DNA of 64,000 nucleotides, from positions 124,001 to 188,000 of IMG/VR virus record IMGVR_UViG_3300042473_001265; one strand, 5' to 3'. The stretch's first letter is position 1, and each line of letters starts with the position of its first letter. Made by a program: the position numbers and the translations under genes. This document shows, piece after piece, positions 43,727-59,135 of this stretch. A model generated the notes under the pieces. It searched no databases, was not told the DNA's origin, and was given only the letters and a program-made list of their open reading frames with translations.

Positions 43727-46700
43727 TAAATTACTCCGCTGCCTGGGGCAGTTCTAAGGTTGGTACTGGTTAATGCTTCGATCACCACAATGTCGGCCAC
43801 AGTGGCTGCATTGACAAAAATTTCATTGGGTGCGGATCTGATCTCATATAGATCACCAAAACTCTTTTGTGGATTTATCGGAACCAATACCACTGAACTC
43901 ACTATATCGCCCAACTGTTGATGCAGGTAGGCCGATAGTTCTGAAAAGTAGAATGTATCACCAAAATCCCAATTTGCAATTGCAAAGTATGCGTCTAAGT
44001 TGGCAACCACATTGCTTTTGATTTCACTGACTGATGCAGTTGAGTTACTGGCGCGAATAACTTTGATAGTTGCTCGCAACTGTTCTGCTGCCTTGGCGCC
44101 AAACAGCGGTTTGAACTGCACAGGGTTCACAATTACATTGTCAGAAATCATTTTATAATTTTGTAATCCTGCATACTCTGTACTTAGCGCATCAATTGTG
44201 GGTGGTACAGGTGCTGGTATTGTGTTGGTAGAATCCACAATGTAATTTCTATAAGCAGTATAGTAATCTTGTGTGACCACATACAAATCAATAATGTTTG
44301 TTGAGCCCGGATCAATGCGATTGGTCAAAGAGCTATTGTGGCGATATTGATAATATAAATCTTGGCGTCCCACACGACTTTCGTAGTCATTGGTCACTAC
44401 CAGCGAAGTTGTGCCAGTTGTGTTCAATGATAAAATATAAAATACTTGATCAGTATAAGCATAAAACACTTGACCAACAATGTACTGTGATTTTTCTAAG
44501 GTAATGTCATCTAGTGTTGCGTACTGATCGTTTACTATGCCAGAATCCACCAGCACATAGCGTTCAAGATTGTCAAAGTCCACAATCCGTTGAAAGAATA
44601 CCAATTTGGTATCAGGGTTGACTGCTGGCGCAACAATTTCGTCAAAAAAGTCTGGATTGTCGGGTACACCGTCGGCATCTCTGTCTTGCCAAGATACCAG
44701 CACTTGATAATCATCTACATACCCGTCGGGCTGCACAGGCTGGCCAATGATACGCATTGAAATGTCGCTGTCAAGTGGCAAATTAGAATCAGGACGACTG
44801 TTTGTTTTCAGTACTCTTACAAAGTCACGAATGACTGTGCCTGTGCGGCTGTCATAGATTTGTTCGTCGCCGTAAAAAAAGAATCGTGTTTCAAGTACAC
44901 TGCCAAAATAATAATTCAATGCTCTAGTGGTCACTTGGTATGATTCACCGTTGGTAACAAATTGTACTACCCAGCTGGCATCTAAATTTGCGCCTGAGGT
45001 GTCACCGGCATAGGTTTCACTCCAAGTGGCATCCACTGCAAGATTACTGGCAGTAATCACATACCATGTGTTGGTCAAGTTATTGTAGCCAAGACCAAAA
45101 TTGCGATACAATTCAATTTGAGCCAGAGCACTTTGTCTGACAGTTGTGCCTAGATCAGTCAAGAACAGCGGAATTACTTCAACACATTGAGAGTTGGTGG
45201 GCACATAGTTGTTGAGTACCACTGGACCTAATCCATTGGTAAAATTACCTAACCCTTGATTTGTTCCTTCAAGATATACCGCTGTGGCCGATGCCCATAT
45301 GGTTAATTTTTCGTCGGCTCTGGTAGGAGTGCCCAATACCAGTCTATTGTTGGCATCAAAGTAATAGCCAGCTGGCGCTCTAAATTTGATCAAGCTGCCA
45401 ACTTGAACATATTTCATATTGTTACTGGAGTACGATCCTATGGAAACAGGAAAACCGGCGGCATTTTTAAAATAACCAGTGGTTTCGTTTGCCAGTGTCG
45501 TGCTCTGGTTCCAACTCACTGCCAATGGTATCAGCGACGGTCTTGGATAGTTTGCATAGTAAAATTGTGTTGTGGCTGCGTTTGCCAATATTGGTTCAAC
45601 ACGATTGGTCAATGTATCGCTGATGTCATTGGTTGTTAACCAACTGAATAAAAATGTTGGCAATTCATTTGATTTATACAATGCACCATCGCTGCCAAAT
45701 GTGTTGGTGCTGCTGTACTTGCCAGTGTTGTCAACTAAATCAAGATATCGACTGGTGCCAATTGAAGCACGGTTCAGTGCTTTGGATTTGATAATTGAAT
45801 TGTACTGAGTGAACGGGAAGTTGTTGTAGTCTTCACCATTGACCATGCGATTTTGTGTGTAGTAGCGGGCCGGAGCTCGTTGCTTGATTTCGTCAATGCT
45901 TTCACGAGCAAGAGAATTACTCACTGGCTCTGTAATACCACAGGTAACTGTCAATGTTTCATTCTGTCCAGTGCGACTGATGTAAGCAATGCTCAGTATC
46001 ACACTTTGCATTTCTTCTGGGTTGATGATGTATTGCAAACCATTTGATGCGCGAACATATGCACGGAAAAATCCCACTGGAATTTCTGAAAATACACCGT
46101 CGCCAAAGTTCAATGTGATTTGGTCGCTGGCTCTGCTGGTAACTGAATACAATGGTCGTAGCCCGTTTTGTTGTTCAGCCGCGGCTGTGTACACACTTTC
46201 AACAAACTCCCATTCACGAGCGATGTTGCCCACATTGTCCAATTGATATAACCAGCGGTCGGTGTTGTTGACACCTTCGATATTGATATTGACTGCACGG
46301 TTGGCAATGCGTTCGGCCAAATTAAAATCTTGATTTTGCAGCACACCCTGTTTGAATAGGAAGAAGAATCCAGTATTGGCTGATGCAAACCCCAGTTGGT
46401 CGTTGCGGAACAGCATGCCAAATTGTCCGTTGGGAACTGGGCTTGGTTCATACACATATTCAACGCCGGTTGGTAGTCCACTGGCAGTGGCGCTGACAGC
46501 TTCAAATGGCATGTTGACGCCATCTACCACTGCGCTGTAAGGCAGCACTGGCAGAAAACCTGGAACTAAATTAACTGTATATTCATCAGTGCGAACACCC
46601 TGAATTGTGGTTCTATTGCCGGGACGACCAACTCGCTGAGTGTTTATCAATGAAGAATTTATAATGGCGTTGAACTGTTCTTGCCAATCAAAATTTGTAG

Positions 46701-47139
46701 GGTCAGCCCAGTTGACAGTGATGTTGGCCAGGTTGATGCCGTTGTAGTCCACAACATTTTCTGTTGTTTGTATAGAAAACACCTTGAGATATCCATTGGC
46801 TTCGGTGTTGCGTTTGGGTGTGTAGCTTACCAAATTGGCCAGGCGGACCACACTGTCGCGGCGTTCAGCAGTGTCTAGATAATTTTCACGAGTGTTTAAA
46901 TCTGTGCGGAAGGCCAATGACTGACCCATAAATGCCATCACATCCAGTATGGCAATAAATTCTGACGACTCAATGTAGTCATTGAATGTTTCCGGGTAGT
47001 ACAGTCGTACATAGTCAACAAAACTCTTGCGCAGAGTTTCAAAGTCATAACTTTGGAAGTCGGCTTCGCGGTAAGTTTGGTAGATTCTTTTCCAATCCTC
47101 AACACCAAATACTGCGGTTTGTCTAGTAGTTTTTGCCAT
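43726..47139 (-). CDS. Baseplate wedge subunit (T4 gp6-like)
   Basis: DFETLRKS..FNDYIESSE..ENYLDTAERRDSVVRLA..SYTPKR; FGDGVF; ESIDEIKQRAP..QNRMVNGEDY. Confidence 0.85.
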   Translation of the reverse strand: MAKTTRQTAVFGVEDWKRIYQTYREADFQSYDFETLRKSFVDYVRLYYPETFNDYIESSEFIAILDVMAFMGQSLAFRTDLNTRENYLDTAERRDSVVRLANLVSYTPKRNTEANGYLKVFSIQTTENVVDYNGINLANITVNWADPTNFDWQEQFNAIINSSLINTQRVGRPGNRTTIQGVRTDEYTVNLVPGFLPVLPYSAVVDGVNMPFEAVSATASGLPTGVEYVYEPSPVPNGQFGMLFRNDQLGFASANTGFFFLFKQGVLQNQDFNLAERIANRAVNINIEGVNNTDRWLYQLDNVGNIAREWEFVESVYTAAAEQQNGLRPLYSVTSRASDQITLNFGDGVFSEIPVGFFRAYVRASNGLQYIINPEEMQSVILSIAYISRTGQNETLTVTCGITEPVSNSLARESIDEIKQRAPARYYTQNRMVNGEDYNNFPFTQYNSIIKSKALNRASIGTSRYLDLVDNTGKYSSTNTFGSDGALYKSNELPTFLFSWLTTNDISDTLTNRVEPILANAATTQFYYANYPRPSLIPLAVSWNQSTTLANETTGYFKNAAGFPVSIGSYSSNNMKYVQVGSLIKFRAPAGYYFDANNRLVLGTPTRADEKLTIWASATAVYLEGTNQGLGNFTNGLGPVVLNNYVPTNSQCVEVIPLFLTDLGTTVRQSALAQIELYRNFGLGYNNLTNTWYVITASNLAVDATWSETYAGDTSGANLDASWVVQFVTNGESYQVTTRALNYYFGSVLETRFFFYGDEQIYDSRTGTVIRDFVRVLKTNSRPDSNLPLDSDISMRIIGQPVQPDGYVDDYQVLVSWQDRDADGVPDNPDFFDEIVAPAVNPDTKLVFFQRIVDFDNLERYVLVDSGIVNDQYATLDDITLEKSQYIVGQVFYAYTDQVFYILSLNTTGTTSLVVTNDYESRVGRQDLYYQYRHNSSLTNRIDPGSTNIIDLYVVTQDYYTAYRNYIVDSTNTIPAPVPPTIDALSTEYAGLQNYKMISDNVIVNPVQFKPLFGAKAAEQLRATIKVIRASNSTASVSEIKSNVVANLDAYFAIANWDFGDTFYFSELSAYLHQQLGDIVSSVVLVPINPQKSFGDLYEIRSAPNEIFVNAATVADIVVIEALTSTNLRTAPGSGVI

Positions 47140-47199: not shown

Positions 47200-47574
47200 T
47201 TATGCGTAACTGGCACTGGCGGTTTGTTGATCAAAGTACACGCTTAAAAATTCAGTTGTTTGTCCCGGTACCATCGTCACTTGCAGCTCAACCAATATGC
47301 CGTTTTCTTGCGGAAACATAGCAGCTGACTGTATAAAAATTCTTGGATCTAAACTGGCCACACGCTGTATTTCTGCCAGTATGGCTCGTTCAGTGTCTTG
47401 TGTTTGATTTTCAAATATGTAACTGTATATCAAGGTGCCATAACCTGGACGACCTGGCAGTTGTCCTTGCTGTATATTAAGAGCATTCAGCAGATCGCGC
47501 TTGACCAATTCAAAATCTACCAATGTAAATTTCTTGGTTTGTCCTATTGTGTTGAATCCTACAAATGTTGTCAT
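47200..47574 (-). CDS. Baseplate wedge protein (T4 gp25-like)
   Basis: LVKRDLLNAL..GQLPGRPGYGT..IFE..DPRI; TAAATA 4 nt upstream (47579-47584). Confidence 0.85.
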   Translation of the reverse strand: MTTFVGFNTIGQTKKFTLVDFELVKRDLLNALNIQQGQLPGRPGYGTLIYSYIFENQTQDTERAILAEIQRVASLDPRIFIQSAAMFPQENGILVELQVTMVPGQTTEFLSVYFDQQTASASYA

Positions 47575-47589
47575 ATTGTATTTACTCAG

Positions 47590-48945
47590 TTAGGCTGTCT
47601 GTATTGGAGGCAGTCCCAATCGTTGTCTAATAATTGGGTCGTCACCGGTGTAAGGAGGTGCGTTGGGATCTCCCAAAGAGTTAACAAAAGAGTTGGCATT
47701 TGCGTTGAGTCCAGCAAGGCCACCTGGTATGTTTCCGTTAAGTGCAGCTTTTGCTTGCAGGGCGGCAGCTTCTAATGAAGCAATATCAACGGCCTGTGGA
47801 CTAAAAAGCTGCGCCGGTATTTTACTGCTACCAACCAGTTTACTCACTGCTGAATTCAATGTTGCTCTGTCCACTGTGCCTTTGAATCCAGCTGCTGGAA
47901 TAACACCTGCCACTGCGGCCGGCAATTTGAAATCACTAAAATTAACAGCAAACTGTCCTTGTTTGGCCAACGAATCCATTTGTGGTTTTAATGCTTCTGC
48001 TTTTGCGGCAAAGTCGGCACCGGCACTTTTTAGACTTCCTAAATTGCCAATGGCACCGGTGATGCCGCCGGATTTTGAAAAGCCGCTGACTGAACTTTCG
48101 AAGCCGCTGGCAATGCCTTTGAGGCTACTGGCAACACCTTCCACACTGTTTACATCTAATCCTGTTGAACTGGCTGAACTTTCAATTCCTTTGGCCCAGG
48201 CCGTGGCAGTGCCCACGCCAAATTTGCTAGAATTTGCCAGCAGGCCGCCAAGGTCTGCTATTCCTTTGTTGGATGCAAGGGCAGCACTGGCGCCGCCCAA
48301 TGCATCTGCCCCTGCTTGGGTTATTGCAGGCAGTCCCAGTCGAGCTCTGACAATCGGATCATCGCCGGTGTAGGGCGGTGCGTTGGGATCATTTAATGCA
48401 TTGACTGCCGAATTAATGCTTGCACTGAGTCCGGCAGCACCACCTTTTAAACTGCTGCCAAAACTGCTGCCAATACTGCTGCCAATATTGCCAACACCGT
48501 CGAGGCCGCCGCTCACTGCTGATTTTAAACTGCCGGCCAGTCCGGACAATTTAGATTCCAACGAGGATAATGAATTTTCTAACCCACTGGTGGATAGTTT
48601 ACTCAGCACATCTGGTGCCTTGACCAGCCCAGCAGATGCTGATATTAAATTTTTGCCAAAATTAGCAGCAGCATCATACAGTTGTCCAACTGGTGGAGTT
48701 AAATTAACACCGGGTGTTTTGATTTGACCAGTTTCGACCAATGTATCAAAACTGGATTTCATAAGCCCAAATTGAATTTTATCTTGCAGTGCTGGATTTG
48801 ACAGCAGCGCATTTACTCCAGTAACACCATCTTTGCCGGTCCATACACTGGGACTGTTCAACACACTGATGAAATTGCTTGGGTTGGGTATACCCGTAAA
48901 GGCCGGTAAGTTAGGTAATCCAGGAATATTTGGTAAAGTAGCCAT
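47590..48945 (-). CDS. Tail/baseplate-associated protein (WTGKDG lysozyme-like half-domain plus Gly/Ser/Ala-rich region)
   Basis: Start moved to TAATG-coupled ATG 48945; two PYTGDDP modules. Confidence 0.65.
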   Translation of the reverse strand: MATLPNIPGLPNLPAFTGIPNPSNFISVLNSPSVWTGKDGVTGVNALLSNPALQDKIQFGLMKSSFDTLVETGQIKTPGVNLTPPVGQLYDAAANFGKNLISASAGLVKAPDVLSKLSTSGLENSLSSLESKLSGLAGSLKSAVSGGLDGVGNIGSSIGSSFGSSLKGGAAGLSASINSAVNALNDPNAPPYTGDDPIVRARLGLPAITQAGADALGGASAALASNKGIADLGGLLANSSKFGVGTATAWAKGIESSASSTGLDVNSVEGVASSLKGIASGFESSVSGFSKSGGITGAIGNLGSLKSAGADFAAKAEALKPQMDSLAKQGQFAVNFSDFKLPAAVAGVIPAAGFKGTVDRATLNSAVSKLVGSSKIPAQLFSPQAVDIASLEAAALQAKAALNGNIPGGLAGLNANANSFVNSLGDPNAPPYTGDDPIIRQRLGLPPIQTA

Positions 48946-49472
48946 TATGGTCCTTGTAAAAATCTTGCGCATGTGCCAGGTTTTAGTAACCCGGCTGCTT
49001 CCAACTGATCGCAATTGAACCCGTACTTGCCGCACCCCAGTTCGTTTGTGATAACATCGGCTGGTTGACACACACATGCAGCAATTGCTGCCATAATTGC
49101 TTGAACATTAGTCGGAGTCAATGGGCCTATTGACGCAGTCACCACTGATGTGTCCACATAATCAGACACTGTAATGCCATTGTTGATTGGCACATCTCTC
49201 AATGCAGGCAACGACGAAACCACTGCTTCTCCGTAAATGGCCAGCAACGGAACATCTGGAACGCCGGCTGTTCCTCTGTCAAGGCGTGACAGAGAAAATT
49301 GAACACCAGTTGTGGTCGGCGACTGCAATGTGTCACCAGATTTTAAACCAACAAATGTGCCAGCGGCCAACTGTTCAAGATAAACTCGTTCAGCTTCAAT
49401 TGCAGTGGTTCCAGCAGGAGCTTCTAATGTGAATAACAATCCATTGGGAAGATTAAAACTAAATTTAGCCAT
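48945..49472 (-). CDS. Tail/baseplate-associated protein ending in GKYGF..LEAAGLLKPG (first half of a lysozyme-like domain)
   Basis: ORF track 175 aa; follows gp5-like gene. Confidence 0.65.
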   Translation of the reverse strand: MAKFSFNLPNGLLFTLEAPAGTTAIEAERVYLEQLAAGTFVGLKSGDTLQSPTTTGVQFSLSRLDRGTAGVPDVPLLAIYGEAVVSSLPALRDVPINNGITVSDYVDTSVVTASIGPLTPTNVQAIMAAIAACVCQPADVITNELGCGKYGFNCDQLEAAGLLKPGTCARFLQGP

Positions 49473-49473
49473 G

Positions 49474-50988
49474 TTATGATACTGTTCCTGTAAATCCTGC
49501 AGGCAGTGGCGGAGTATTTGGCGGAGTGGTTGGTTGCCCAGGTTCCATTGGTACTTCTACGCTGACGCCTTGATTGTGAAACGGCCACGGTTCGTGCGTG
49601 GGTGCTCTGGTCACAATGCTTTCTAATCCCGAAGAAGAAATTTGCCAACCAGTGGCGTTGTTGAATTCTGTTTCAGGCATTACATATTTTTCCAACTTCT
49701 TGGGTGCATCTACATTTTCTGCAGATCCGCCATTGAGATCAATGCCGCCGGCTTGCAATGTCATGGCAGACCCAGCGTTCCATGATCCGTTGTTGCTGGC
49801 CAGTGCTAGACTGCCGTCGGCTTTGACAGCAATGCGAGCTTTGCTGTACAGAACGGTTTCTTCTGTGCTGTAAAATGTCAATTTCTTTTCAGATTCTACA
49901 GTTGTGCCTTCCATACTTTTCATATTGATACGAGCACCGGCAAACATGTTGATGTCTTTGTCTGCGTGAAAATTAATTGTTCCTTGTGTGCGAACATTAA
50001 CCGAGTTGGTAGCATACACATCCAGTGTGCCTTCTTGTCCCATTTCTAACCAAGTTTGTCCATTGGCATGAATGATGTATAAGAAGTTGCCGTCGTCACT
50101 CATTGTGATCTGATGACCGCCGGCTGTGCGAACACGCACAAGATTGTCTTTGTTGTTGAGATTGCCGTCATCCATCACAATGCTGTGGCCGCCACGACGG
50201 CCAATCACATTTACATCTGTGGCATTGATAGTTCTAGCAGCGATGCGTTGTTGTATATCAACTTCTGAAAATCCACCTTGGTACACTGGCCGCCCTGGCG
50301 TACTGATACCAAACACAGCACTGGGACTTTCTCGCTGGCTGGTTGAACTGATGGGGCCGCGCATTGGATCAGCCAGTGTGCCTTGCTGAAACATTTCAGC
50401 TGCTATAAAGCTGTGTACAGGTTTTGGTTGATTAAAGAATTGCGGATTATTGTCTATCTTTGAATTGTTTGGATTGATTTCTGTCACCGGCAATACAGTT
50501 GCGCCCAGGTAGTAGCTTTGTTGATCACTGTTTTGTAAATCAAAATTTGCACTGGACCCAATGGCCGGAATCATATGCGTCATGCCTTGATCTGGAATAC
50601 ATCCCATGTAATAGCCCAAGTTTGGGTCGCCGCCGGCAAAGAAACACAACACACTTACTCCAAGATCTGGAGGCGTGAACCACATGCCATAACTTTGCGG
50701 ATTCCCGTCCAGGTATCCTCCTACCGAGTTAGTATCACCTTTTTTACCAGCCTGTGGTGGTGTTGCTCCATAGAACGGAGATGCATAACTCACAGTGCGC
50801 CACAGCGACTTATTTGATGGATCGGACCCGGCAAACTGCTCAATATAAACTTGTAACCGACCTTGTCTGGTTGGATCAACATTGTTTTTTACCACGCCGA
50901 CAAACGGACCAAAGTCCGCTTTCATTCCGCCACGGTCGTATTTGTAATTGGGTGCTACGCCACTGTTTCTTTGTATATTTTCAGACAT
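49474..50988 (-). CDS. Baseplate central spike (T4 gp5/VgrG-like; OB-fold plus beta-helix, no lysozyme domain)
   Basis: DPTRQGRLQV, SYGMWFTPPD, RTAGGHQITMSD, beta-helix repeats, C-terminal RAPTHEPWPFH. Confidence 0.8.
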   Translation of the reverse strand: MSENIQRNSGVAPNYKYDRGGMKADFGPFVGVVKNNVDPTRQGRLQVYIEQFAGSDPSNKSLWRTVSYASPFYGATPPQAGKKGDTNSVGGYLDGNPQSYGMWFTPPDLGVSVLCFFAGGDPNLGYYMGCIPDQGMTHMIPAIGSSANFDLQNSDQQSYYLGATVLPVTEINPNNSKIDNNPQFFNQPKPVHSFIAAEMFQQGTLADPMRGPISSTSQRESPSAVFGISTPGRPVYQGGFSEVDIQQRIAARTINATDVNVIGRRGGHSIVMDDGNLNNKDNLVRVRTAGGHQITMSDDGNFLYIIHANGQTWLEMGQEGTLDVYATNSVNVRTQGTINFHADKDINMFAGARINMKSMEGTTVESEKKLTFYSTEETVLYSKARIAVKADGSLALASNNGSWNAGSAMTLQAGGIDLNGGSAENVDAPKKLEKYVMPETEFNNATGWQISSSGLESIVTRAPTHEPWPFHNQGVSVEVPMEPGQPTTPPNTPPLPAGFTGTVS

Positions 50989-50997
50989 GTGTTATCC

Positions 50998-52698
50998 TTA
51001 GGTATCTCTAACTATCAGTTGCGTTGCACCCGGAGTGGCCGGCAACGGTGGGAGTCCCAGTCGTTGTCTAACAATTGGATCATCGCCGGTGTAAGGTGGT
51101 GCATTTGGGTCCTGTAGTGATTTAACAAAAGAATCGGCATTTGATGCAATGCCCCCCAGAGTCAATGTTGGTGGCAACGTGACTGCTGGTGCCAACAGTT
51201 GTTGACCTCCTAATTCAGTTGTGAGCAATGCTTGAGCTGATTCAATGCCCGGTGTGGCCAATGATTCAGTTGGTGCTGCTAGTAGTGCTTGATTTTTTCT
51301 TGCTAGGTCCGCATTGGTAAGTTCTTGAGTTGCTGGTACTGCTCGATCTTGACGGGCAAAATCTCCAGCGGATAGGCTACCTGATGCTGGCGCTTTGGTT
51401 CTTGGATCAGTAATTTGAAATAATTTGCCCCGAAGGTCTTGTTCAAATTTGCCTTTGCTAAATTTGTTAGTACATTCAGTGGCTGTGTAGGTGTAGGTCT
51501 GAGATGCCTGAGCTGTGTTGGGAGTTTTGTTAGGACTTGCCAGGCCGGTACCGTTGACATCGTAATCTGCCACAGTGTTCCATTGCAGATCAAAAATAAT
51601 TTCTTGGGCGTCAAAATTGATTCCACCGTCGGGATTAAATGGGTTGAAATTGAATTCCAGTGACTTAACACCAGTGGCTGCTTCGCCTTGTTGTAACCAA
51701 GCTGGATCTCCAATGATGTTGAGATTTACCGTGGCAATGTCAGTTGGACTGTACAAATAATCAGCTGCACTTGCACCAATGCTGTTGGTTATTCCATCGG
51801 CACCTTGACTACTACTGCCGGCAACTGCTGCTTGATATTCAATTGCAGGAGCTTCTCGGGCCAGTTGATTGGTCAAGGCCTTGGTGTTGGTTGCAATTGT
51901 AGAATTGCTAAAGGTCAATTTATATGCAGAATTGAATTGCTGCTCATATCGTATCACCTGTGTGTTCTGTCCAGTAAACCAATACTTGTAACTTTTGTGT
52001 ATTCCACGCAGAGTGCCGGCTGGAAAATACTCGCTCATCATGCTGCTTATACCATATGCGCTGATGGTATATGTTATATTATACGCAAAATCTCTTCTTT
52101 TTTTGTCATACTGCAACGGCGAAGTGGTTACTGAAATTTTATACCACCCAAGATCGCCCAATGGTTTCTGTGGCTTGGTTTGTTGACTAACTTCGTCAAC
52201 CATCCAGGCCGCTTGATCTGTGATGTAACTGCTGTTTTTTAATATTTCGTCAAGAATTGCAACAATTGGAGTGCCAGCAGCAAAGTCAAAAGTTCTAACA
52301 TCGTATGATACAGAATTGGTAGCAGGATTGAGAGCATCAGCCTGATTGACACTTTGTTGCATGGGAACTTTGGCTTTGTTGGGTTTGCCACCTTTGGTAA
52401 CTTTTGCATCACCCAGTGCTGGCGGTGCAAATTCAATTTTGTATACATTGGCCACTTCCCATACACCATCAGCAACCAATTTTTGTTCGGCTGCATTTAA
52501 TGAATCTACTAAGCCGACTGCTGCTATTTTACTTTTTTTAATAGCTACTGCATTGGCCTTAGGTGGTGGTGTTGCTACGGGTGGTGGTGGTGTTGCTACG
52601 GCTGCTCGCGCTGCTGCACCCTTGGCCAACATAGCTGCGTCGGCTGCACGCATTCGAGCTATTATGCCCGGTCGTTTGGCGAAAAAGTCAGTGGCCAT
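50998..52698 (-). CDS. Baseplate hub/tail protein, C-terminal part (gp27-like)
   Basis: KSYKYWFTGQN, LNIIGDPAWL, FSKGKFEQDL; AGGAG RBS; one PYTGDDP module. Confidence 0.6.
   Translation of the reverse strand: MATDFFAKRPGIIARMRAADAAMLAKGAAARAAVATPPPPVATPPPKANAVAIKKSKIAAVGLVDSLNAAEQKLVADGVWEVANVYKIEFAPPALGDAKVTKGGKPNKAKVPMQQSVNQADALNPATNSVSYDVRTFDFAAGTPIVAILDEILKNSSYITDQAAWMVDEVSQQTKPQKPLGDLGWYKISVTTSPLQYDKKRRDFAYNITYTISAYGISSMMSEYFPAGTLRGIHKSYKYWFTGQNTQVIRYEQQFNSAYKLTFSNSTIATNTKALTNQLAREAPAIEYQAAVAGSSSQGADGITNSIGASAADYLYSPTDIATVNLNIIGDPAWLQQGEAATGVKSLEFNFNPFNPDGGINFDAQEIIFDLQWNTVADYDVNGTGLASPNKTPNTAQASQTYTYTATECTNKFSKGKFEQDLRGKLFQITDPRTKAPASGSLSAGDFARQDRAVPATQELTNADLARKNQALLAAPTESLATPGIESAQALLTTELGGQQLLAPAVTLPPTLTLGGIASNADSFVKSLQDPNAPPYTGDDPIVRQRLGLPPLPATPGATQLIVRDT
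52562..52601. repeat. 21-bp tandem duplication (VATPPPP VATPPP)
   Basis: ggtggtggtgttgctacgg twice in tandem. Confidence 0.8.
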
Positions 52699-52700
52699 GA

Positions 52701-54146
52701 TTATGCTCCTACCTGGAATGGCGAAAGACTTTCGCCGGTGAAACTACCATTTTCATCTACTCCAGCATTGGCAGGTACCACATTGACTGGAGGGGCCGGT
52801 GGCTGTGGAGTTGTAATTCTGCCGTCGTCTGCTGACACTTCTGCATTTGCTATGCCATTCATTAATAAATCTTTTACTGTGGCGCCGGTGATTTCAATTG
52901 GTGCTTTTATCACGCCCAAATTGGATCCAAACCCCACATCGTATACCAATGGTTTTGCCTTGACCGAGTATTCAACCAATTTGTTTCCCACAGAAAAATT
53001 CAACTCAGACAGTTTGAATGGTATAATTTTTTCCACTAGAGCATTGTTGTTGTCGCTGTTGCTGGCCTGCACTATCTTGCCAGTTTCGTCGTAGCCGTAA
53101 AATTTTATGACCAAACAATACATTGCAGAAACATAAGGAATATCAGAATTTTTATACACACTTTGCACTGCGTTATAAAGATTATCAATCAGTGTTATGC
53201 CTGTTGTTTCTGTCACAGTAAATGAGATGTCTGTTGTATTGTTGGCCCGGCCAGTGCCTTTTCCTGTTATTTTACTTTTAATTTCTAAATTGTCAATGTA
53301 ATAATCTAATTCAAAAAATTTATTGCGAGCAATTGCTGCGTTGGGAGCGGTAGAAGCTCCACCACTCTGCATCAACAAACTGTAAGCGGCATAATTGGCC
53401 TTTCCAGTTTTTGTCAATGCAGCAACACTGGCTGGATCCATCAAGTACCAGGCAATGTTATAGGTGTAACTGGCATACTGATCCAATATGTTGTTTCTAG
53501 GAGCAAATCTTGTTTTGTTGAATGCGTTGAGAATTCGTTGAGTGTTTGCTGCTGTCTGACCGCTGTCTTCGCCGGCACCCACACCGGCTGCGCCTGCAGG
53601 CCGTCCTTCTGTGCTGCGGCCAGTATTGGCTGGTGGAACACTCTGAGTCTGAGCCAGGGTCTTTACAGGAGGGTTGGTTCCTGTGTCTGTGTTGGCGGCC
53701 AGAGTGGCAGCTTGATTTGTGGTCAGCCGTTCGTTGGCACTGGCCGGCGGTGGTGCAGGATTTTGTGTGGCGCCGTCGGCTGATTCTTTTACTTCAGAGG
53801 TGGCAGTGGGGGCTGTTTGTTTTGCATCAAAATCTGCTTTTTGCTGTGCTGCGTACAGATCATTTTCAAGAGTTCGAATTTTTGCTTGTTCGGCCTCGAG
53901 TGCCTGTGCGGCTGCGTCGCCGGCTGCGTCAATTTTGGCATCAAGCTGAGCAGCCTGCTCGCGCAGAAGTTTTGCTCCGGCTTGGTCGCCGCCCTGAGCT
54001 TGTTTTCGAGCAGCCGCTATCAGCTGATCTTTTTCGGCTTCCAACACAGCAACTTCGCGCCGGGCAGCGCCATTAGCGGCCTCCAACGGGCCCAGCGCTG
54101 CGCGAGCTGCTGCTATCCGTTGTTCAATTTCTGCTGGTGTTGCCAT
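52701..54146 (-). CDS. Baseplate hub/tail protein, N-terminal part
   Basis: Coiled-coil N-terminus; NILDQYASYTY, DYYIDNLEI, ISFTVTE..G..LIDNL, IKFYGYD. Confidence 0.6.
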   Translation of the reverse strand: MATPAEIEQRIAAARAALGPLEAANGAARREVAVLEAEKDQLIAAARKQAQGGDQAGAKLLREQAAQLDAKIDAAGDAAAQALEAEQAKIRTLENDLYAAQQKADFDAKQTAPTATSEVKESADGATQNPAPPPASANERLTTNQAATLAANTDTGTNPPVKTLAQTQSVPPANTGRSTEGRPAGAAGVGAGEDSGQTAANTQRILNAFNKTRFAPRNNILDQYASYTYNIAWYLMDPASVAALTKTGKANYAAYSLLMQSGGASTAPNAAIARNKFFELDYYIDNLEIKSKITGKGTGRANNTTDISFTVTETTGITLIDNLYNAVQSVYKNSDIPYVSAMYCLVIKFYGYDETGKIVQASNSDNNNALVEKIIPFKLSELNFSVGNKLVEYSVKAKPLVYDVGFGSNLGVIKAPIEITGATVKDLLMNGIANAEVSADDGRITTPQPPAPPVNVVPANAGVDENGSFTGESLSPFQVGA

Positions 54147-54149
54147 AGT

Positions 54150-54449
54150 TTAGAATCCCAACACTGCTCTTAGTGTGCTCAGTTTGGGAACATAGATATT
54201 GGTATTCATTGCAAAATCCAATGGTGGTTTTGTGAGTGTGTTGGGGTTGCGTTGATAAAACACCCACCATAGGCCACCGTTGTCGTACAGGTCAAATGCC
54301 AGTAGATCTGGTCTGTACTGATAAGTTTGATTGATGGTAAACACCAGATCGTCGGACTGTGAGGGGATTGGTCTATTGACCATGGTGTCTAGGAAGAACT
54401 GACTGTAGCCAGTGGTTGCATATGGACTGGTTGAATTATAAGTTGCCAT
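54150..54449 (-). CDS. Baseplate wedge protein (T4 gp53/LysM-like)
   Basis: YQYRPDLLAFDLYDNGGLWWVF..N; TAATG-coupled start. Confidence 0.8.
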   Translation of the reverse strand: MATYNSTSPYATTGYSQFFLDTMVNRPIPSQSDDLVFTINQTYQYRPDLLAFDLYDNGGLWWVFYQRNPNTLTKPPLDFAMNTNIYVPKLSTLRAVLGF

Positions 54450-56527
54450 TACCACATTCCTCCTTTGAGCAGATCACCGGTGGCATATTGTCGTACACTG
54501 AATCGTTGACTCTGTGCTTGACGACTGACCACTGGCAACAGCGAAACTGATATGGTCATTTTGGTTGGCACATATGTGGGAATTGTGTTTGATCCCAGTG
54601 TCTGCGGCGCTGGCGGAATATTTTGGCCGCCTTTTGGCAAGGGCTGTCCGTTGAACAGTTTGGATGATGCCAATCTGTTTACTGCACCACCCAGTACGCC
54701 GCCCAGTATGCCATTGCCCCAGGATGTGCCAGGGCCAGTTGAATTGTTTGATTGGCGTTGCTGTAGCATATTGCTGTTATTTACATTGGGACTGTAGGCA
54801 CGAATATAATCCACATCAGCTGGTAGGTCATATGTGAATCCACTGACCACACAAGGATGTTCGTTGAATTGAAACTCACCCAGGCCGGTCAGATACACCA
54901 AGGGCGGCGGTGTTCCGCGCTGTGGATCTTGTCCGTAGAACATTTTGGTAACAGATTTAAAAAAGTGTATCACTGCCAACAGGTATTCGGCCTCTGCTGT
55001 GCTCTGTGCTGTGAAAGTCGAACTTATTGTAAACGGTTCCACTGCACTGCCTTGATAAAAATATCCTTTATAATTGGAATGTGTGATGTCCGTGGTGACA
55101 TAAGTGGCCTTGTAACTGGTCTGTATTGTGGGAGTGTAGGGGAATATCACACCATCTGGTGCCAAGGGTGCTAAAATTCCTGGCGGCTTGGCCATGTACA
55201 GATAATCGGCTAGGGGTGCTAGGCGCAGTTTGACACGCCAGTCGGCGTTGTTTTTGTTGCTGCGTTGATTGGCAATGGTATTTTGTGCTCGGGCCTTGTC
55301 CAATGTAACAGCTTGTTGAGCAGCAGCTTCTTGTGCATCAGCAGCTTGCAGTTGTGCGCGAGCAGCGGCCTGATTTGCATCTTGGGCAATTGTTTCTTCA
55401 TCAGTTGGATAGACTGTGGGGTCATCAGTAACTGCTGCAGGTTCAGCTGTTTGTTCGGCTAGCTCTTGTCGATTGAGTTCTTGTTCTCTTTCTAATCTCT
55501 CAGCTTCGAACGGATCATCCGCAGGGTCAACATCAGCAGGATCAACATCTATTGGGTTATCATTGAGTTCTTGTTCTCTTTCTAATCTTTCAGCTTCAAA
55601 TGGATCGTCAACTGCCTCGGGTTCGCCCAACTCAACTGCGTCTGCGCCGTCGGTTTCTTCGCTGGTGAATCCATAGTCATTTCCTAATTCTTCGGGAGTA
55701 ACTGGTGCTGCGGCGGCAGCCGTGTCAGCATTGGGTGCCCGGCCTTGAGCATCTATCTGCGCTTCGGTTTGTTGTGCCTGCTGTTGATCATTGTTTGAAT
55801 CAACTGCTTCATTGGTGCTGGTGGTTCCCGAAGTAACTGTTTCAGTAGTTGTTGTGGTATTGGGTACTGTGGTTACTGTTGGCGCACCTGGTGTTTCGGC
55901 ATCAATTTGTTTGTTTTTAAGTTCGCTTCTTTCAGCTGACAGTTTGTCTAGTTTTTCTTGTCGTTCTTGTTTTTCCTCGGGACTGAGAGGTGGAAGACCT
56001 TGTTTTTTTCTAGCAAAGTCGCTGGGATTGTCTTTCTGGAACTGATCAATTTCAGCTTGTTTTGCCGCAATTGCCGGTTGCACTGCCTGGCTGGCTGCAT
56101 TGGGAGTTCTGGCTCCAGCAGTGACTGTGGTTGACCCTCCTCCACTGACTGTTTCCGTACTGGTAGTGGTATAGTTGATTGGAGTTTTGCTGCTGGGCTG
56201 CGCTGCGGCATCTTGAGCATAATCAACCTGTTCAAAGTTTGATGGTGACTTTAGCCCTTGGTCAAACCTGGCACTGTCAGCAGCTTCGGCTTGGTCGGCC
56301 CTGGCGCTTTGTGCAGCTTCGGCTGCGGTTGGTGGATCATAATCAACACCGGCCACTTTGCTGCCGCCGCCGGCTATGGTGGCTCCTAACTGTCCATTAT
56401 CGCCAATGGCATAGTTGGTAGCTTCAGCTTCGCTGATGCCAGACTGAGCAAACGCCGCATCTTGGGACATGCCTTTTTGAATCAAGCTGTTATATAGTGC
56501 TGCTTTTTTTGGGCTGTAGTCTGCCAT
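54449..56527 (-). CDS. Baseplate tail-tube initiator/cap (gp48/gp54-like) with long acidic N-terminal extension
   Basis: VIFPYTPTI..HSNY..FTAQ..HFFKSVTKMFYG..GTPPP..PCVV; AGGAAA RBS. Confidence 0.6.
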   Translation of the reverse strand: MADYSPKKAALYNSLIQKGMSQDAAFAQSGISEAEATNYAIGDNGQLGATIAGGGSKVAGVDYDPPTAAEAAQSARADQAEAADSARFDQGLKSPSNFEQVDYAQDAAAQPSSKTPINYTTTSTETVSGGGSTTVTAGARTPNAASQAVQPAIAAKQAEIDQFQKDNPSDFARKKQGLPPLSPEEKQERQEKLDKLSAERSELKNKQIDAETPGAPTVTTVPNTTTTTETVTSGTTSTNEAVDSNNDQQQAQQTEAQIDAQGRAPNADTAAAAAPVTPEELGNDYGFTSEETDGADAVELGEPEAVDDPFEAERLEREQELNDNPIDVDPADVDPADDPFEAERLEREQELNRQELAEQTAEPAAVTDDPTVYPTDEETIAQDANQAAARAQLQAADAQEAAAQQAVTLDKARAQNTIANQRSNKNNADWRVKLRLAPLADYLYMAKPPGILAPLAPDGVIFPYTPTIQTSYKATYVTTDITHSNYKGYFYQGSAVEPFTISSTFTAQSTAEAEYLLAVIHFFKSVTKMFYGQDPQRGTPPPLVYLTGLGEFQFNEHPCVVSGFTYDLPADVDYIRAYSPNVNNSNMLQQRQSNNSTGPGTSWGNGILGGVLGGAVNRLASSKLFNGQPLPKGGQNIPPAPQTLGSNTIPTYVPTKMTISVSLLPVVSRQAQSQRFSVRQYATGDLLKGGMW
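55472..55609. repeat. Two-copy direct repeat (90-bp period) encoding DDPFEAERLEREQELN
   Basis: attgagttcttgttctctttctaatct..cagcttc..ggatc at 55472 and 55562. Confidence 0.85.
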
Positions 56528-56641: not shown

Positions 56642-57658
56642 GTGGCAACAAAACGCACTATATCCAACTTGGATTCTACCAAATCAATATCATCAACTCC
56701 GATAGCGCCAAAAGTAAATTATCTCAACAACAGAGACATTTTAAAAGAGATTCACGCCAGCAAAAACACCTACTGCTACTATGTCAATCCTGATGCGGAC
56801 AGTCAATACGACATTATTTTGCCCAGCCTGGACAAAATCAATCAGCGTACCATTGCCGAAGCACGCCGAAATCGTGCTGACCGTCTCAAACGACTGGGCA
56901 CTATAGTTGACCCTGTGAAAATCCCCAACACTGATTTGGTGTTCCGTATCAGCTGCTGGGATCATATCCCAATGGCAGAGAAAAAAATTCCCAAATCAGA
57001 ACAAAAGAAAAAACAAAAACTGGAAGACCTACTGCAATTTGAAGACGAGCCCATTGATGATTCACTAGACGAGCTGCTGGATGATGTGCTGTTGAATCCG
57101 GTTCGGCAGCGACTGAACTTTCCTCCATTTGAGCATTGGCGCCTGGATAATAACAAAGAAAAATACCTTGTTGGCCGTAGTCATTGGAAAGGCAATCTTG
57201 AAACCGGAGAATTTTCCAAGGATCACGGCGACATGACACGCAAACTTGCACACATGTTTATGAAGCTGTGTGAACGCTATGCCACCAGATCAAACTGGCG
57301 CGGCTACACCTACAACGAAGAAATGCGCGGCCAGGCCCTGTTGCAACTGAGTCAAATTGGACTACAGTTTGACGAAAGCAAAAGTCAAAATCCATTTGCC
57401 TACTACACTGCTGCCATTACCAACAGCTTTACTCGCATCTTGAATTTGGAAAAGAAAAGTCAAAACATTCGTGATGACATTTTGGAAATCAACGGGCTAA
57501 GTCCGTCGTGGACAAGACAAAATGCCGGCCGGCCCAGTATGGCTCAGCTGAGTGGTCCTGTTACCATCACCACTTACATTGTGGATCGACCAGTGGCGGA
57601 GCCTGCGGGTATCAATATTGATGTTGAAGAATACAATAAAGACAATGCTACCAACTGA
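56642..57658 (+). CDS. Late-transcription sigma factor (T4 gp55-like)
   Basis: YLNNRDIL; NWRGYTYNEEM..FDESKSQNPFAYYT..NSFTRILNLEKK matches gp55 pattern; synteny with gp47/gp46. Confidence 0.85.
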   Translation: MATKRTISNLDSTKSISSTPIAPKVNYLNNRDILKEIHASKNTYCYYVNPDADSQYDIILPSLDKINQRTIAEARRNRADRLKRLGTIVDPVKIPNTDLVFRISCWDHIPMAEKKIPKSEQKKKQKLEDLLQFEDEPIDDSLDELLDDVLLNPVRQRLNFPPFEHWRLDNNKEKYLVGRSHWKGNLETGEFSKDHGDMTRKLAHMFMKLCERYATRSNWRGYTYNEEMRGQALLQLSQIGLQFDESKSQNPFAYYTAAITNSFTRILNLEKKSQNIRDDILEINGLSPSWTRQNAGRPSMAQLSGPVTITTYIVDRPVAEPAGINIDVEEYNKDNATN

Positions 57659-59135
57659 GTTGTACCAACAATTGCAAAAAACATACAAGGTTGTATGTTT
57701 TGTAGACATGGCTGATATTTCCAAGTCGCCTGGCGCTATTTTTAAATTGTTTACAGACCATTACAAGTCTGAATACAAAGAAAATGAACGATTGGTTTTT
57801 TACACCAACGAAGATCCTGGAATCAAGTTACTTGAGCATATTCAACAGGCAGCAATGATAATTGATATTAGCCATTGTTTTATATTAATTTGTTGCCCTG
57901 TAGATTTAACTGATCGTATGGGGTTGACCGATACTACAATGCAACAGATTGTAATTGAGTGTGACTCTGTACCACTTGACAATGGATTTGTTGTGCCCGA
58001 TACCATGTGTGTTTTTCCGTTTAAACATCTTGAAATTAACCATCAAGGTGCCGTTAAACCTTGTTGTTTGTATAAAACTACAGTAGGACAAGTTCCGGAT
58101 CAATCAATTAACGAAATTTTTTATTCTGAAAAAATGGAAAAATTACGCAATGATTTTTTAAACGGTATTAAATCTAGTGATTGCTCCCATTGTTGGAATC
58201 TTGAAGACATCGGACTTACAAGTTCTAGGCAAGCAAGTTTACTTCTGGATAGACAACAATTGTATACCACATGGCTTTCTAAGCCTGGTGTGTATAGTTT
58301 GGATTTAAAGCCTGGCAATGTGTGCAATTTTAAATGCAGAATTTGTAATGCACAATCAAGTTCGTTGTATGCTGGCGAACAACTAGCAAAATCAACTAAT
58401 CCTGAATCTAAATTACAAATACAAAAATTCATTGATGGCAGTCGTTGGTTTGAAAATAGTGAAAAATTTATTCAAGAATTTGAAGAGTTGCTGTGCCAGA
58501 TAGAAAATCTTGATTTTTATGGTGGTGAGCCTTTTTTATTAAAGAATTTAAACACTTTGCTCAGCAAGGCTGTTGAAATGGAACGAGCACAGAACATCAG
58601 GTTACATTTTAATACCAATGGATCTGTATTTCCAGCTCATCTAATAGACACGTTTAAAAAATTTAAACATATTGACTTGGCTATTAGCGTTGACTGTGTT
58701 GGACCAAGATTTGAATACGAACGCGGCGGTTCTTGGCAAGAAATTGAAGAGAATATTAAAAAACTGAGTCGACTGGTTGACGACCAGTTTAGTGTTTACT
58801 TGTTTACTACTGTAAATATTCAAAATGTTTTATATTTAGATGAGTTGTACTCTTGGGCAGAATCAACTGGGTTGAGGGTAGTCTTAAATGTTTTAAAAGG
58901 ACCTCAATTTATGAATATTGACTATATGACTCAAGCAGCAAAGGATTTGGTAATTGAAAAATTTCAAAACAGTAGCATTCCAGAACTTCAAAGCATTGCC
59001 AATCGTGTCAAAAAAAGCCCAGGTAGCAATGGAGAGAAGTTTATAGAGTATATGCAACAACTCGACAAATGGAGAAATGAAAACTTTGGGTTGACGCACA
59101 AAGAGATTGCAAATGCTATGGGATACATGTTATAA
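57645..59135 (+). CDS. Radical SAM protein with extra N-terminal domain plus twitch domain
   Basis: MCVFPF..KPCC..CSHCW; CNFKCRIC; GGEP; FNTNG; start moved to ATG 57645. Confidence 0.88.
   Translation: MLPTELYQQLQKTYKVVCFVDMADISKSPGAIFKLFTDHYKSEYKENERLVFYTNEDPGIKLLEHIQQAAMIIDISHCFILICCPVDLTDRMGLTDTTMQQIVIECDSVPLDNGFVVPDTMCVFPFKHLEINHQGAVKPCCLYKTTVGQVPDQSINEIFYSEKMEKLRNDFLNGIKSSDCSHCWNLEDIGLTSSRQASLLLDRQQLYTTWLSKPGVYSLDLKPGNVCNFKCRICNAQSSSLYAGEQLAKSTNPESKLQIQKFIDGSRWFENSEKFIQEFEELLCQIENLDFYGGEPFLLKNLNTLLSKAVEMERAQNIRLHFNTNGSVFPAHLIDTFKKFKHIDLAISVDCVGPRFEYERGGSWQEIEENIKKLSRLVDDQFSVYLFTTVNIQNVLYLDELYSWAESTGLRVVLNVLKGPQFMNIDYMTQAAKDLVIEKFQNSSIPELQSIANRVKKSPGSNGEKFIEYMQQLDKWRNENFGLTHKEIANAMGYML

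What the first reader, a model, noticed from the sequence alone, without database searches (positions are those of the whole stretch)
47602..51141. A 23-33-aa module (DPNAPPYTGDDPIxRxRLGLP) shared between two different baseplate proteins
Seen: two copies in 47590-48945 (internal and C-terminal) and one near the C-terminus of 50998-52698. The two C-terminal copies extend to NA[ND]SFV[NK]SL[GQ]DPNAPPYTGDDPI[IV]RQRLGLPP. DNA copies differ mostly at third positions, indicating selection on the peptide. All copies sit in low-complexity linkers. Inference: a portable docking or recognition tag (assembly, protease or modification site). The DDP-helix repeat in 54449-56527 may be a distant relative.
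Basis: partly seen in the sequence, partly recalled or inferred. Interest (0 to 1): 0.65.

Follow-up and report, generated by a model that had tools for sequence, protein, structure and literature searches.

The report
Portable peptide tag on phage tail-axis proteins
A strongly conserved 33-residue peptide module hangs on flexible linkers from several unrelated central tail proteins of lake jumbo phages and also occurs on periplasm-facing tails of a few bacterial envelope proteins, so it is most likely a tethered binding tag whose partner is still unknown.

Summary
The window lies in a 340-kb jumbo phage from lake water. It holds exactly three copies of the module: two in protein A (47590-48945, minus strand) and one in protein B (50998-52698, minus strand). 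A and B are alike nowhere else. The copies are old and under strong purifying selection (core dN 0.02, dS 1.3).

B has the fold of a gp27-like baseplate hub. A is a low-complexity protein between the spike gene and the gp25-like gene.

The module is portable. In related phages it sits, nearly always at the C-terminus after a disordered linker, on at least six unrelated central-axis tail proteins.

Its 16-residue core (Y-x-G-D-D-P-I/V-I/V-R-x-R-L-G-L-P-P) also occurs on tails predicted to face the periplasm. These belong to rare accessory bacterial, mobile-element or phage envelope proteins, including a TolC-family protein with five copies.

A complete close relative lacks the canonical motif, near-identical phages carry different tails, and no phage gene co-varies with it.

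My best reading (0.4) is a tethered ligand for a host-envelope target, met after ejection. The main rival (0.3) is a docking peptide inside the virion, like the C-terminal loop of the T4 tape measure protein. No Pfam, NCBIfam, PDB or literature record covers the motif.

The parts
47602..47700 (-). Module copy A2: the last 33 residues but 3 of protein A (a short helix-prone lead-in, a DPNAPP loop and the 16-residue core)
   Evidence: canonical in orthologues of many relatives
48322..48420 (-). Module copy A1: internal copy in the first G/S/A-rich linker of protein A (residues about 174-206)
   Evidence: present only in the subclade own/L007/L039/L020/L025
51043..51141 (-). Module copy B: in the hypervariable C-terminal tail of protein B, 15 residues before its end
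   Evidence: among close relatives only in own and L007, but common on distant X-B fusion homologues
47590..48945 (-). Protein A (451 aa): three conserved blocks separated by G/S/A-rich variable linkers; a candidate tail-lumen, tape-measure-like protein of unknown fold
   Evidence: (weak phrog_1535 tape measure match, E 0.0013); no Pfam or PDB match; no similarity to T4 gp29
48945..49472 (-). p175 (175 aa): its stop overlaps the start of A (TAATG); it forms one ORF with A in several relatives
49474..50988 (-). gp5/VgrG-like central spike (OB domain plus beta-helix, no lysozyme domain)
   Evidence: 33% identical to the PA5oct hub protein, which is MS-confirmed as a virion protein
50998..52698 (-). 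Protein B (566 aa): gp27-like baseplate hub core (about residues 60-440), hypervariable tail (441-559) and a conserved 7-residue C-terminus (window 51001-51021)
   Evidence: nearly all top structural matches are hub proteins, Z 6-9; PA5oct homologue EST35_0134 is an MS-confirmed structural protein
52701..54146 (-). Protein X (481 aa): fused to B as one protein in distant relatives (phrog_11190)
55973..56032 (-). Possible divergent half-copy (ends in GLPPL) in a segment of the 692-aa structural protein that is conserved among its orthologues. It is a lead only.
   Evidence: conserved among orthologues; not significant with the motif profile

Best explanation
The module is a small helix-loop-helix peptide of about 33 residues. 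Its invariant 16-residue core (Y-x-G-D-D-P-I/V-I/V-R-x-R-L-G-L-P-P) acts as a tethered ligand. It hangs at the end of long, disordered, fast-evolving linkers on proteins of the tail's central axis. In this phage those are the gp27-like hub B and the lumen protein A. In other phages they include the spike-lysozyme, a protein encoded next to PAAR, tube-fold proteins and a homologue of the 692-aa protein. When the sheath contracts, these proteins are the ones pushed through the outer membrane. The tag would then bind a component of the host envelope, either a periplasmic or inner-membrane protein or the cell wall itself. That would fix or orient the ejected hub and channel-forming proteins at the entry site. 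Rare accessory membrane, secreted and outer-membrane proteins of lake Burkholderiales, mobile elements and other phages display the same core in the periplasm. They would use the same target or compete for it. Shown here: the motif, its selection, its carriers, its position, its turnover and the periplasmic topology signals of the non-virion carriers. Inferred: that it binds something, that the partner is in the host envelope, and when binding happens.
For: 1. Purifying selection on the peptide: core dN/dS is about 0.02, with synonymous sites near saturation. 14 of 33 columns are invariant across 18 distinct copies.
2. The carriers are non-homologous, but all lie on the central axis. They are A-type proteins, gp27-like B and X-B fusions (phrog_11190), tube-fold proteins next to the sheath and tube genes, gp5-OB plus VgrG3-like lysozyme proteins, proteins encoded next to PAAR, and a homologue of the 692-aa protein.
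3. The same core sits on tails that signal peptides or transmembrane topology place in the periplasm. Examples are a TolC-family lipoprotein with 5 copies between Pro-rich spacers (PF02321), two-helix and zinc-ribbon-plus-helix membrane proteins of Polynucleobacter and Limnohabitans, and a secreted Cys-rich phage family, phrog_20531.
4. The canonical motif is not needed to build the virion in this clade. Complete relative G307 has none. Only 3 of 400 ORFs are shared with a distant motif-bearing phage but missing from G307, and none is structural.
5. Turnover resembles that of host-interaction parts. L035 and L036 have near-identical A bodies but different tails. L039 lacks the B copy although it is sister to L007, which has it. 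Other lineages carry other short repeats at the same place in B.
6. Two to five copies on one chain fit avidity for a target.
Against: No partner has been identified and no binding was tested. All phage carriers are also parts that line the hub or tube lumen, which is what a docking tag inside the virion would predict. T4 sets a precedent: the last 20 residues of its tape measure protein dock at the distal tube end (bioRxiv 10.64898/2026.03.06.709160). Bacterial carriers are very rare (4 of 301 genomes of one family, 3 of 401 of the order) and lie in islands or mobile elements. They could therefore be phage-derived or decoys rather than users of a host target. The periplasmic topology of the small proteins was read by eye from signal peptides and charge distribution, not computed. 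The host of the phage is unknown; lake Burkholderiales is circumstantial.
Confidence: 0.4

Rival explanations
1. Docking peptide inside the virion. The tag binds a pocket in the hub or distal tube end and holds the flexible tails of lumen and hub proteins in place until contraction, as the C-terminal loop of the T4 tape measure protein does. The bacterial and mobile-element proteins that display the tag in the periplasm would then be decoys that plug the exposed tube end of an incoming phage (superinfection exclusion by mimicry).
For: The carriers are exactly the hub, spike, tube-initiator-like and tape-measure-like proteins. The tag is at the extreme C-terminus in most of them. There is a T4 precedent for a C-terminal docking loop and for a small inner-membrane exclusion protein that acts on the tape measure protein. 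The bacterial carriers are sporadic and lie in islands or mobile elements, as defence genes do. The motif region reaches pLDDT 72-76 in the AF2 model of B.
Against: Complete relative G307 assembles without any canonical copy. No phage protein co-varies with the motif. Tails are swapped between near-identical phages without visible change in the neighbouring hub genes. There are 9-15 copies per virion, and they start from geometrically different places (hub tail, spike linker, the protein next to PAAR). The T4 loop sequence is unrelated.
Confidence: 0.3
2. Self-association module. The copies on the three or six chains of an axial protein bind each other, possibly with a metal ion at the acidic loop, and bundle the disordered tails in the way a foldon-type C-terminal knot does.
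For: The carriers are trimeric or hexameric by analogy (gp5, gp27, tube-fold, TolC family). The position is C-terminal, as for the T4 fibritin foldon (my own knowledge). Local helix-loop-helix propensity is seen in the model.
Against: There are internal copies and up to five copies per chain. It occurs on small membrane proteins of unknown oligomeric state. TolC C-termini point outward from the equatorial domain, far from the threefold axis (my own knowledge). This was not tested here.
Confidence: 0.08
3. Recognition site for an enzyme that cleaves or modifies it during tail maturation or in the periplasm.
For: Strict conservation of a short peptide rich in Asp-Pro and Pro-Pro. T4 gp5 is cleaved in a linker during maturation (my own knowledge).
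Against: Often only 1-4 residues follow the motif, so cleavage would release nothing. No protease or modifying enzyme co-varies with it. The same core occurs in bacterial proteins without any phage context.
Confidence: 0.05
4. Neutral leftover of intragenomic recombination or gene conversion, with no function of its own.
For: A2 and B of this lineage share lineage-specific residues outside the core, which suggests an exchange between the two genes.
Against: dS is about 1.3 with dN about 0.02. The core is invariant across phages whose hub cores are only 20-60% identical.
Confidence: 0.01

Closest known systems
C-terminal loop of the T4 tape measure protein gp29 (residues 571-590), which docks at the distal tube end (bioRxiv 10.64898/2026.03.06.709160)
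   Same: A short peptide at the very C-terminus of a protein encoded in the hub module, after a long flexible or helical body, at the hub-tube junction.
   Different: No sequence similarity and no homology between A and gp29. The T4 loop is not known to be shared with other proteins or with bacterial envelope proteins. Binding in the virion is not shown here.
TolB box and TonB box of colicins and pyocins: about 16-residue linear epitopes in Gly/Ser/Asn-rich disordered translocation domains that capture periplasmic host proteins (my own knowledge, not checked here)
   Same: A short invariant peptide embedded in a long disordered, compositionally biased region of a protein that enters the periplasm from outside. 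Mimicry of, or competition with, host ligands.
   Different: The sequences are unrelated. The carriers here are virion parts. The target is unknown. The motif is found so far only in lake phages and a few Burkholderiales.
Cell-wall-binding repeats of lysins and envelope proteins (LysM, PG_binding_1, SPOR, choline-binding repeats)
   Same: Short modules, often repeated and separated by Pro-rich spacers, attached to muralytic or envelope proteins. Here one carrier is a gp5-like tail lysozyme and another is a TolC-family protein with five copies.
   Different: No match to any Pfam or NCBIfam model. A 16-33-residue unit is smaller than most wall-binding domains. Binding to peptidoglycan was not tested.
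T4 Imm and Sp, and other small envelope proteins that cause superinfection exclusion
   Same: Small accessory inner-membrane or secreted proteins on mobile elements that act on the entry apparatus of incoming phages.
   Different: Imm binds the tape measure protein. The proteins here carry the phage's own tag, so they would act as mimics or competitors. No exclusion phenotype is known for them.
Cargo-loading signals of contractile injection systems (PVC N-terminal packaging signal, T6SS MIX motif; my own knowledge)
   Same: A portable short sequence shared by unrelated proteins that ride in or on the tube-spike complex.
   Different: Those signals are N-terminal and mark effectors. This module is C-terminal, or internal in linkers, and sits on structural hub and tube proteins.

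Membership tests
gp27-like baseplate hub (for protein B) | Fold of tandem tube-like beta-barrel domains shared with T4 gp27, Mu gp44, P2 gpD and the VgrG N-terminal part | tested here: met
   AF2 model built with a 45-sequence alignment (mean pLDDT 56; core blocks 70-90). In the VIA-align wide search, nearly all of the top 30 are hub proteins (diffocin, pyocin R2 hub, Mu gp44, lambda J, PVC/AFP, VgrG), with Z 6-9 and up to 184 aligned residues. Foldseek points the same way but is weak (E 0.015). This is moderate evidence, not strong.
gp27-like baseplate hub (for protein B) | Encoded beside the gp5-like spike gene in the baseplate module; a virion protein | tested here: met
   B lies directly upstream of the spike gene, with synteny conserved in about 55 relatives. 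The PA5oct homologue is MS-confirmed as a structural protein.
gp27-like baseplate hub (for protein B) | Sequence similarity to T4 gp27 | tested here: not met
   hhalign of alignment A4 against T4 gp27 gives probability 0.7%. Hub proteins are often alike in fold only, so this does not exclude membership.
Tape measure protein (for protein A) | Match to tape-measure families, or homology to T4 gp29 | tested here: inconclusive
   phrog_1535 matches at E 0.0013 over 67 residues only. hhalign against T4 gp29 finds nothing. There is no transmembrane-grade hydrophobic segment (highest 19-residue Kyte-Doolittle mean 1.15). The position in the hub module fits.
T4-type tape-measure C-terminal docking loop | Bound to the distal tube end or hub in the assembled virion | not testable with these tools
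   The single complex prediction (B core with the A tail) gave no answer, which counts neither way. A virion structure is needed.
Known wall-binding or docking domains (LysM, PG_binding_1, SPOR, dockerin, SHOCT, HIND) | Match to the family model above its cut-off | tested here: not met
   Pfam and NCBIfam scans of ten carriers find nothing over the motif. The only brush is the HIND motif PF19252 at E 0.085, 12.7 bits against a cut-off of 25. A PDB profile search finds nothing.
Cargo-loading signals of contractile injection systems | N-terminal position on effector cargo | tested here: not met
   The motif is C-terminal, or internal in linkers, and sits on structural proteins.
Proteolytic maturation site | A defined fragment removed; a protease that co-occurs | not tested
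   There are indirect arguments only: 1-4 residues after the motif in many carriers and no co-varying gene.

The most novel reading that the evidence does not exclude
Molecular mimicry in an entry arms race. The tag is the handle by which ejected tail proteins of lake jumbo phages grasp a receptor needed for genome entry, either a host periplasmic factor or the phage's own opened tube end. Mobile elements, other phages and host islands encode membrane-tethered, secreted or TolC-borne copies of the same tag as decoys that block entry. This would drive the observed swapping of tag alleles between near-identical phages.
Probability: 0.15. Interest if true: 0.8.

Novelty: new variant of a known kind. 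Interest (0 to 1): 0.6.

Why it matters
Little is known about what ejected hub, spike and tape-measure proteins do in the periplasm. For uncultured jumbo phages nothing is known. A 16-residue invariant handle shared by many such proteins, and by a few envelope proteins of likely hosts, gives a concrete reagent. A synthetic peptide could be used to fish for the partner, which may be a host entry factor, the cell wall or a tail pocket. If the small membrane proteins that carry the tag turn out to block infection, that would be a new exclusion principle based on mimicry of a phage tag. The motif also marks tail-axis proteins in metagenomic phage contigs that have no other annotation.

Tried and rejected
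- AF2 of B from a single sequence failed (pLDDT 36). It was repeated with an alignment.
- The complex prediction of the B core (residues 60-440) with the A tail (404-451) gave no answer (score 0.00). It is not evidence either way.
- The cultured-phage collection has no DNA match to the region and no tblastn match to the motif.
- PDB sequence and profile searches with B, the A family and the motif found nothing.
- A literature search for four motif strings gave 0 papers.
- An ESM Atlas feature search with the A tail gave no usable hit.
- hhalign of the A family against T4 gp29 and of the B family against T4 gp27 found nothing.
- Phyletic profiling for a phage-encoded receptor compared ORFs shared by G000 and the motif-bearing G001 but missing from the motif-free G307. 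It left three non-structural ORFs: one PP-loop ATPase-like, one 2OG-oxygenase-like (both read by eye) and one unknown.
- A comparison of neighbours of the bacterial carriers found no recurrent partner gene. Only a resolvase was shared by two loci.
- The DDP-helix repeat of the 692-aa protein as a relative of the motif was rejected: the profile does not detect it.
- Laying contigs of four lake runs on 47400-52800 showed identical copies of the phage and no listed variant inside the three motif copies. Contigs drop rare variants, so this adds little.
- One locus from the genome scan (L078, Algihabitans) is a wrong-frame artefact in GC-rich DNA.
Full report
**Setting.** The window is bases 124001-188000 of a 340,172-bp IMG/VR virus record, estimated 98% complete. 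Near-identical DNA occurs in at least 24 lake-water metagenome runs.

The region of the finding is a baseplate module on the minus strand. In order of transcription it contains:
- a 692-aa structural protein (54449-56527, phrog_12050);
- a gp53-like wedge protein (54150-54455);
- X (52701-54146);
- B (50998-52698);
- a gp5/VgrG-like spike (49474-50988);
- p175 (48945-49472);
- A (47590-48945);
- a gp25-like protein (47200-47574);
- a gp6-like wedge protein (43726-47139);
- a 4815-aa ORF.

The nearest cultured relatives are distant. The spike is 33% identical to that of Pseudomonas phage PA5oct, and it also matches Atu_ph07 and the Rak2-like jumbo phages. In PA5oct the homologues of B, the spike, gp25 and gp6 are virion proteins by mass spectrometry.

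**The observation.** Three copies exist, at 47602-47700, 48322-48420 and 51043-51141. No further copy is found in the genome by tblastn or by two profile searches of all six-frame ORFs. A and B are similar only over the module.

In the 22-codon core, A2 against B shows 11 synonymous and 1 non-synonymous difference (dN 0.021, dS 1.33). The other pairs give dN 0.07-0.10 and dS 0.7-1.1. The copies are therefore old, and the peptide is under strong purifying selection.

**The carriers in this phage.** An AF2 model of B built with a 45-sequence alignment is of moderate quality (mean pLDDT 56, core blocks 70-90). Residues 430-529 are disordered. The motif region itself scores 72-76 and contains a short helix.

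A structure search that does not depend on Foldseek returns almost only baseplate hub proteins: diffocin, pyocin R2 hub, Mu gp44, lambda J, PVC and AFP hubs, and VgrG, with Z 6-9. Foldseek agrees weakly. Given its position beside the spike gene, B is best read as the gp27-like hub. Sequence similarity to T4 gp27 is absent.

B has three parts:
- a conserved core (about residues 60-440);
- a hypervariable tail in which other lineages carry other short twofold repeats;
- a 7-residue extreme C-terminus conserved in all orthologues.

The module sits in the hypervariable part.

A has three conserved blocks separated by variable G/S/A-rich linkers. It has no Pfam, PDB or NCBIfam match. It has only a weak tape-measure hit, no homology to T4 gp29 and no transmembrane-grade segment. 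In several relatives p175 and A form one ORF. A is a hub-module protein, possibly a lumen or tape-measure-like protein, but this is not settled.

**Distribution in phages.** The synteny gp53-X-B-spike-p175-A-gp25-gp6 holds in about 55 IMG/VR relatives. The pattern of the motif among them is as follows:
- The C-terminal copy of A is canonical in many relatives.
- It is replaced by divergent variants that keep a D..I/L.R.R-L/V-G..P skeleton in others (L013, L016/L036 and L033 types).
- It is absent in the most distant relatives.
- The internal copy A1 is limited to one subclade.
- Among close relatives, the B copy occurs only in this phage and L007.

A profile search of 1.84 billion representative proteins found 66 hits, 32 of them below 1e-10, nearly all within the last 1-25 residues of the protein. 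A second scan of IMG/VR gave 62 distinct carrier ORFs. The carriers fall into unrelated families:

| Carrier family | Evidence |
|---|---|
| A-type proteins and p175-A fusions | |
| B, and 900-1370-aa X-B fusions (phrog_11190) | |
| Tube-fold proteins encoded right after the sheath and tube genes | phrog_4542; |
| gp5-OB plus VgrG3-like lysozyme spikes | |
| 354-365-aa low-complexity proteins encoded right after a PAAR gene | |
| A homologue of the 692-aa protein, with the motif inside its variable N-terminal half | |

One 171-kb contig carries the motif on both its tube-fold protein and its X-B fusion. The B-type carrier is therefore ancient and widespread.

The copy in this phage's B shares lineage-specific residues with A2, which suggests a later exchange between the two genes.

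**Turnover.**
- The B-core tree groups (own,(L007,L039)) with support 99/98, yet L039 lacks the B copy.
- The A proteins of L035 and L036 are nearly identical through residue 344 and then differ completely. One has the canonical module and the other a variant tail.
- The complete relative G307 (346,856 bp, terminal repeats; about 66% identity in the B core) has no canonical copy anywhere.
- Of 400 ORFs of this genome, 312 have a match in G307 and 130 in the distant motif-bearing G001. Only three are shared with G001 but missing from G307, and none looks structural.
- So no phage-encoded partner tracks the motif.

**Carriers outside virion modules.** The 16-residue core, without the DPNAPP lead-in, also ends several other proteins:
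- small proteins with two N-terminal hydrophobic helices;
- a small protein with a zinc ribbon plus one helix;
- secreted Cys-rich proteins with signal peptides (phrog_20531, found in phage contigs and in Caballeronia);
- a TolC-family lipoprotein (PF02321) whose Pro-rich C-terminal tail holds five copies.

Read by signal peptides and charge distribution, all these tails face the periplasm. I made that reading by eye. One small protein is annotated in Polynucleobacter paneuropaeus, and others are in Limnohabitans.

These proteins are rare: 4 of 301 genomes of that family and 3 of 401 of the order. They lie in islands or beside resolvases. No partner gene recurs next to them.

**Interpretation.** All carriers expose the module on a flexible tether. 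All are either parts of the tail axis that enter the periplasm on contraction or proteins that already reside there. The canonical motif is dispensable for building the virion in a close relative, and it turns over in the way host-interaction parts do.

This makes a tethered ligand for an envelope target the best reading (0.4). The target could be a protein or the cell wall. The wall would fit the lysozyme carrier and the five-copy TolC tail. A scarce protein target would fit competition by the accessory proteins.

The main rival is docking inside the virion (0.3). In T4 the last 20 residues of the tape measure protein dock at the distal tube end, and the small membrane protein Imm blocks entry by binding the tape measure protein. 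Under this rival the bacterial carriers would be decoys for the opened tube end. The T4 loop is unrelated in sequence. My single complex prediction gave no answer.

Self-association and enzyme-site readings are less likely. A neutral origin is contradicted by the selection pattern.

**Novelty.** No Pfam, NCBIfam, PHROG annotation, PDB chain or paper covers the motif. The concept of portable short peptides on tail or injected proteins is known. This particular module, its breadth of carriers and its sharing with bacterial envelope proteins appear undescribed.

**Limits.**
- The host is unknown.
- The fold assignment of B is moderate.
- The role of A is open.
- No binding experiment or successful binding prediction exists.
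- The bacterial scans are samples.

Noticed in passing
window 48945-49110 (minus strand): The stop codon of p175 overlaps the start of A (TAATG). The reading frame of A stays open for 160 nt upstream, in the -1 frame relative to p175. In L027/L028/L048 and L029-L031 the two genes are one in-frame ORF. I saw no canonical slippery heptamer by eye. This could be translational coupling or an occasional frameshift fusion.
   Followed up: partly
window 51001-51378 (minus strand); B orthologues in L008-L058: The C-terminal tail of the hub protein B is a hot spot. Different lineages carry different short motifs, each repeated twice, between the conserved core and a conserved 7-residue C-terminus.
   Followed up: partly
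window 55973-56032 (minus strand): A segment of the 692-aa protein that is conserved among its orthologues ends in GLPPL and loosely resembles the second half of the motif. The motif profile does not score it as significant. The twice-repeated acidic helix at 55472-55519 and 55562-55609 is a different element.
   Followed up: partly
window 52701-54146 and 50998-52698: X and B are separate genes here but form one 900-1370-aa protein in distant relatives (phrog_11190). In L053, L055 and L057 the spike ORF is 807-912 aa and no separate A gene is seen, so spike and A may be fused there.
   Followed up: partly
window 29279-43726 (minus strand): A single 4815-aa ORF lies directly downstream of the gp6-like wedge gene. 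PA5oct has a similarly placed giant gene.
   Followed up: no
window 56642-59135 (plus strand): Two divergently oriented ORFs lie next to the baseplate module. By eye, the second has a CxxxCxxC signature typical of radical SAM enzymes. Neither was scanned.
   Followed up: no
G000:C1:224838-229984 (outside the window): The sheath (1101 aa), tube (214 aa) and a tube-fold paralogue (374 aa) lie 40 kb from the baseplate module. Here the paralogue has a G/S/N-rich C-terminal tail without the motif, whereas its homologue in G001 (38% identical) ends in the motif.
   Followed up: partly
L072 and L088 (Polynucleobacter contigs): The small membrane protein that carries the tag sits at the edge of an island. 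The island encodes an ATP-dependent DNA ligase, an acetyltransferase, WGR, LRR and AAA_5 proteins, and a bPH_2 protein. This may be a defence island.
   Followed up: no
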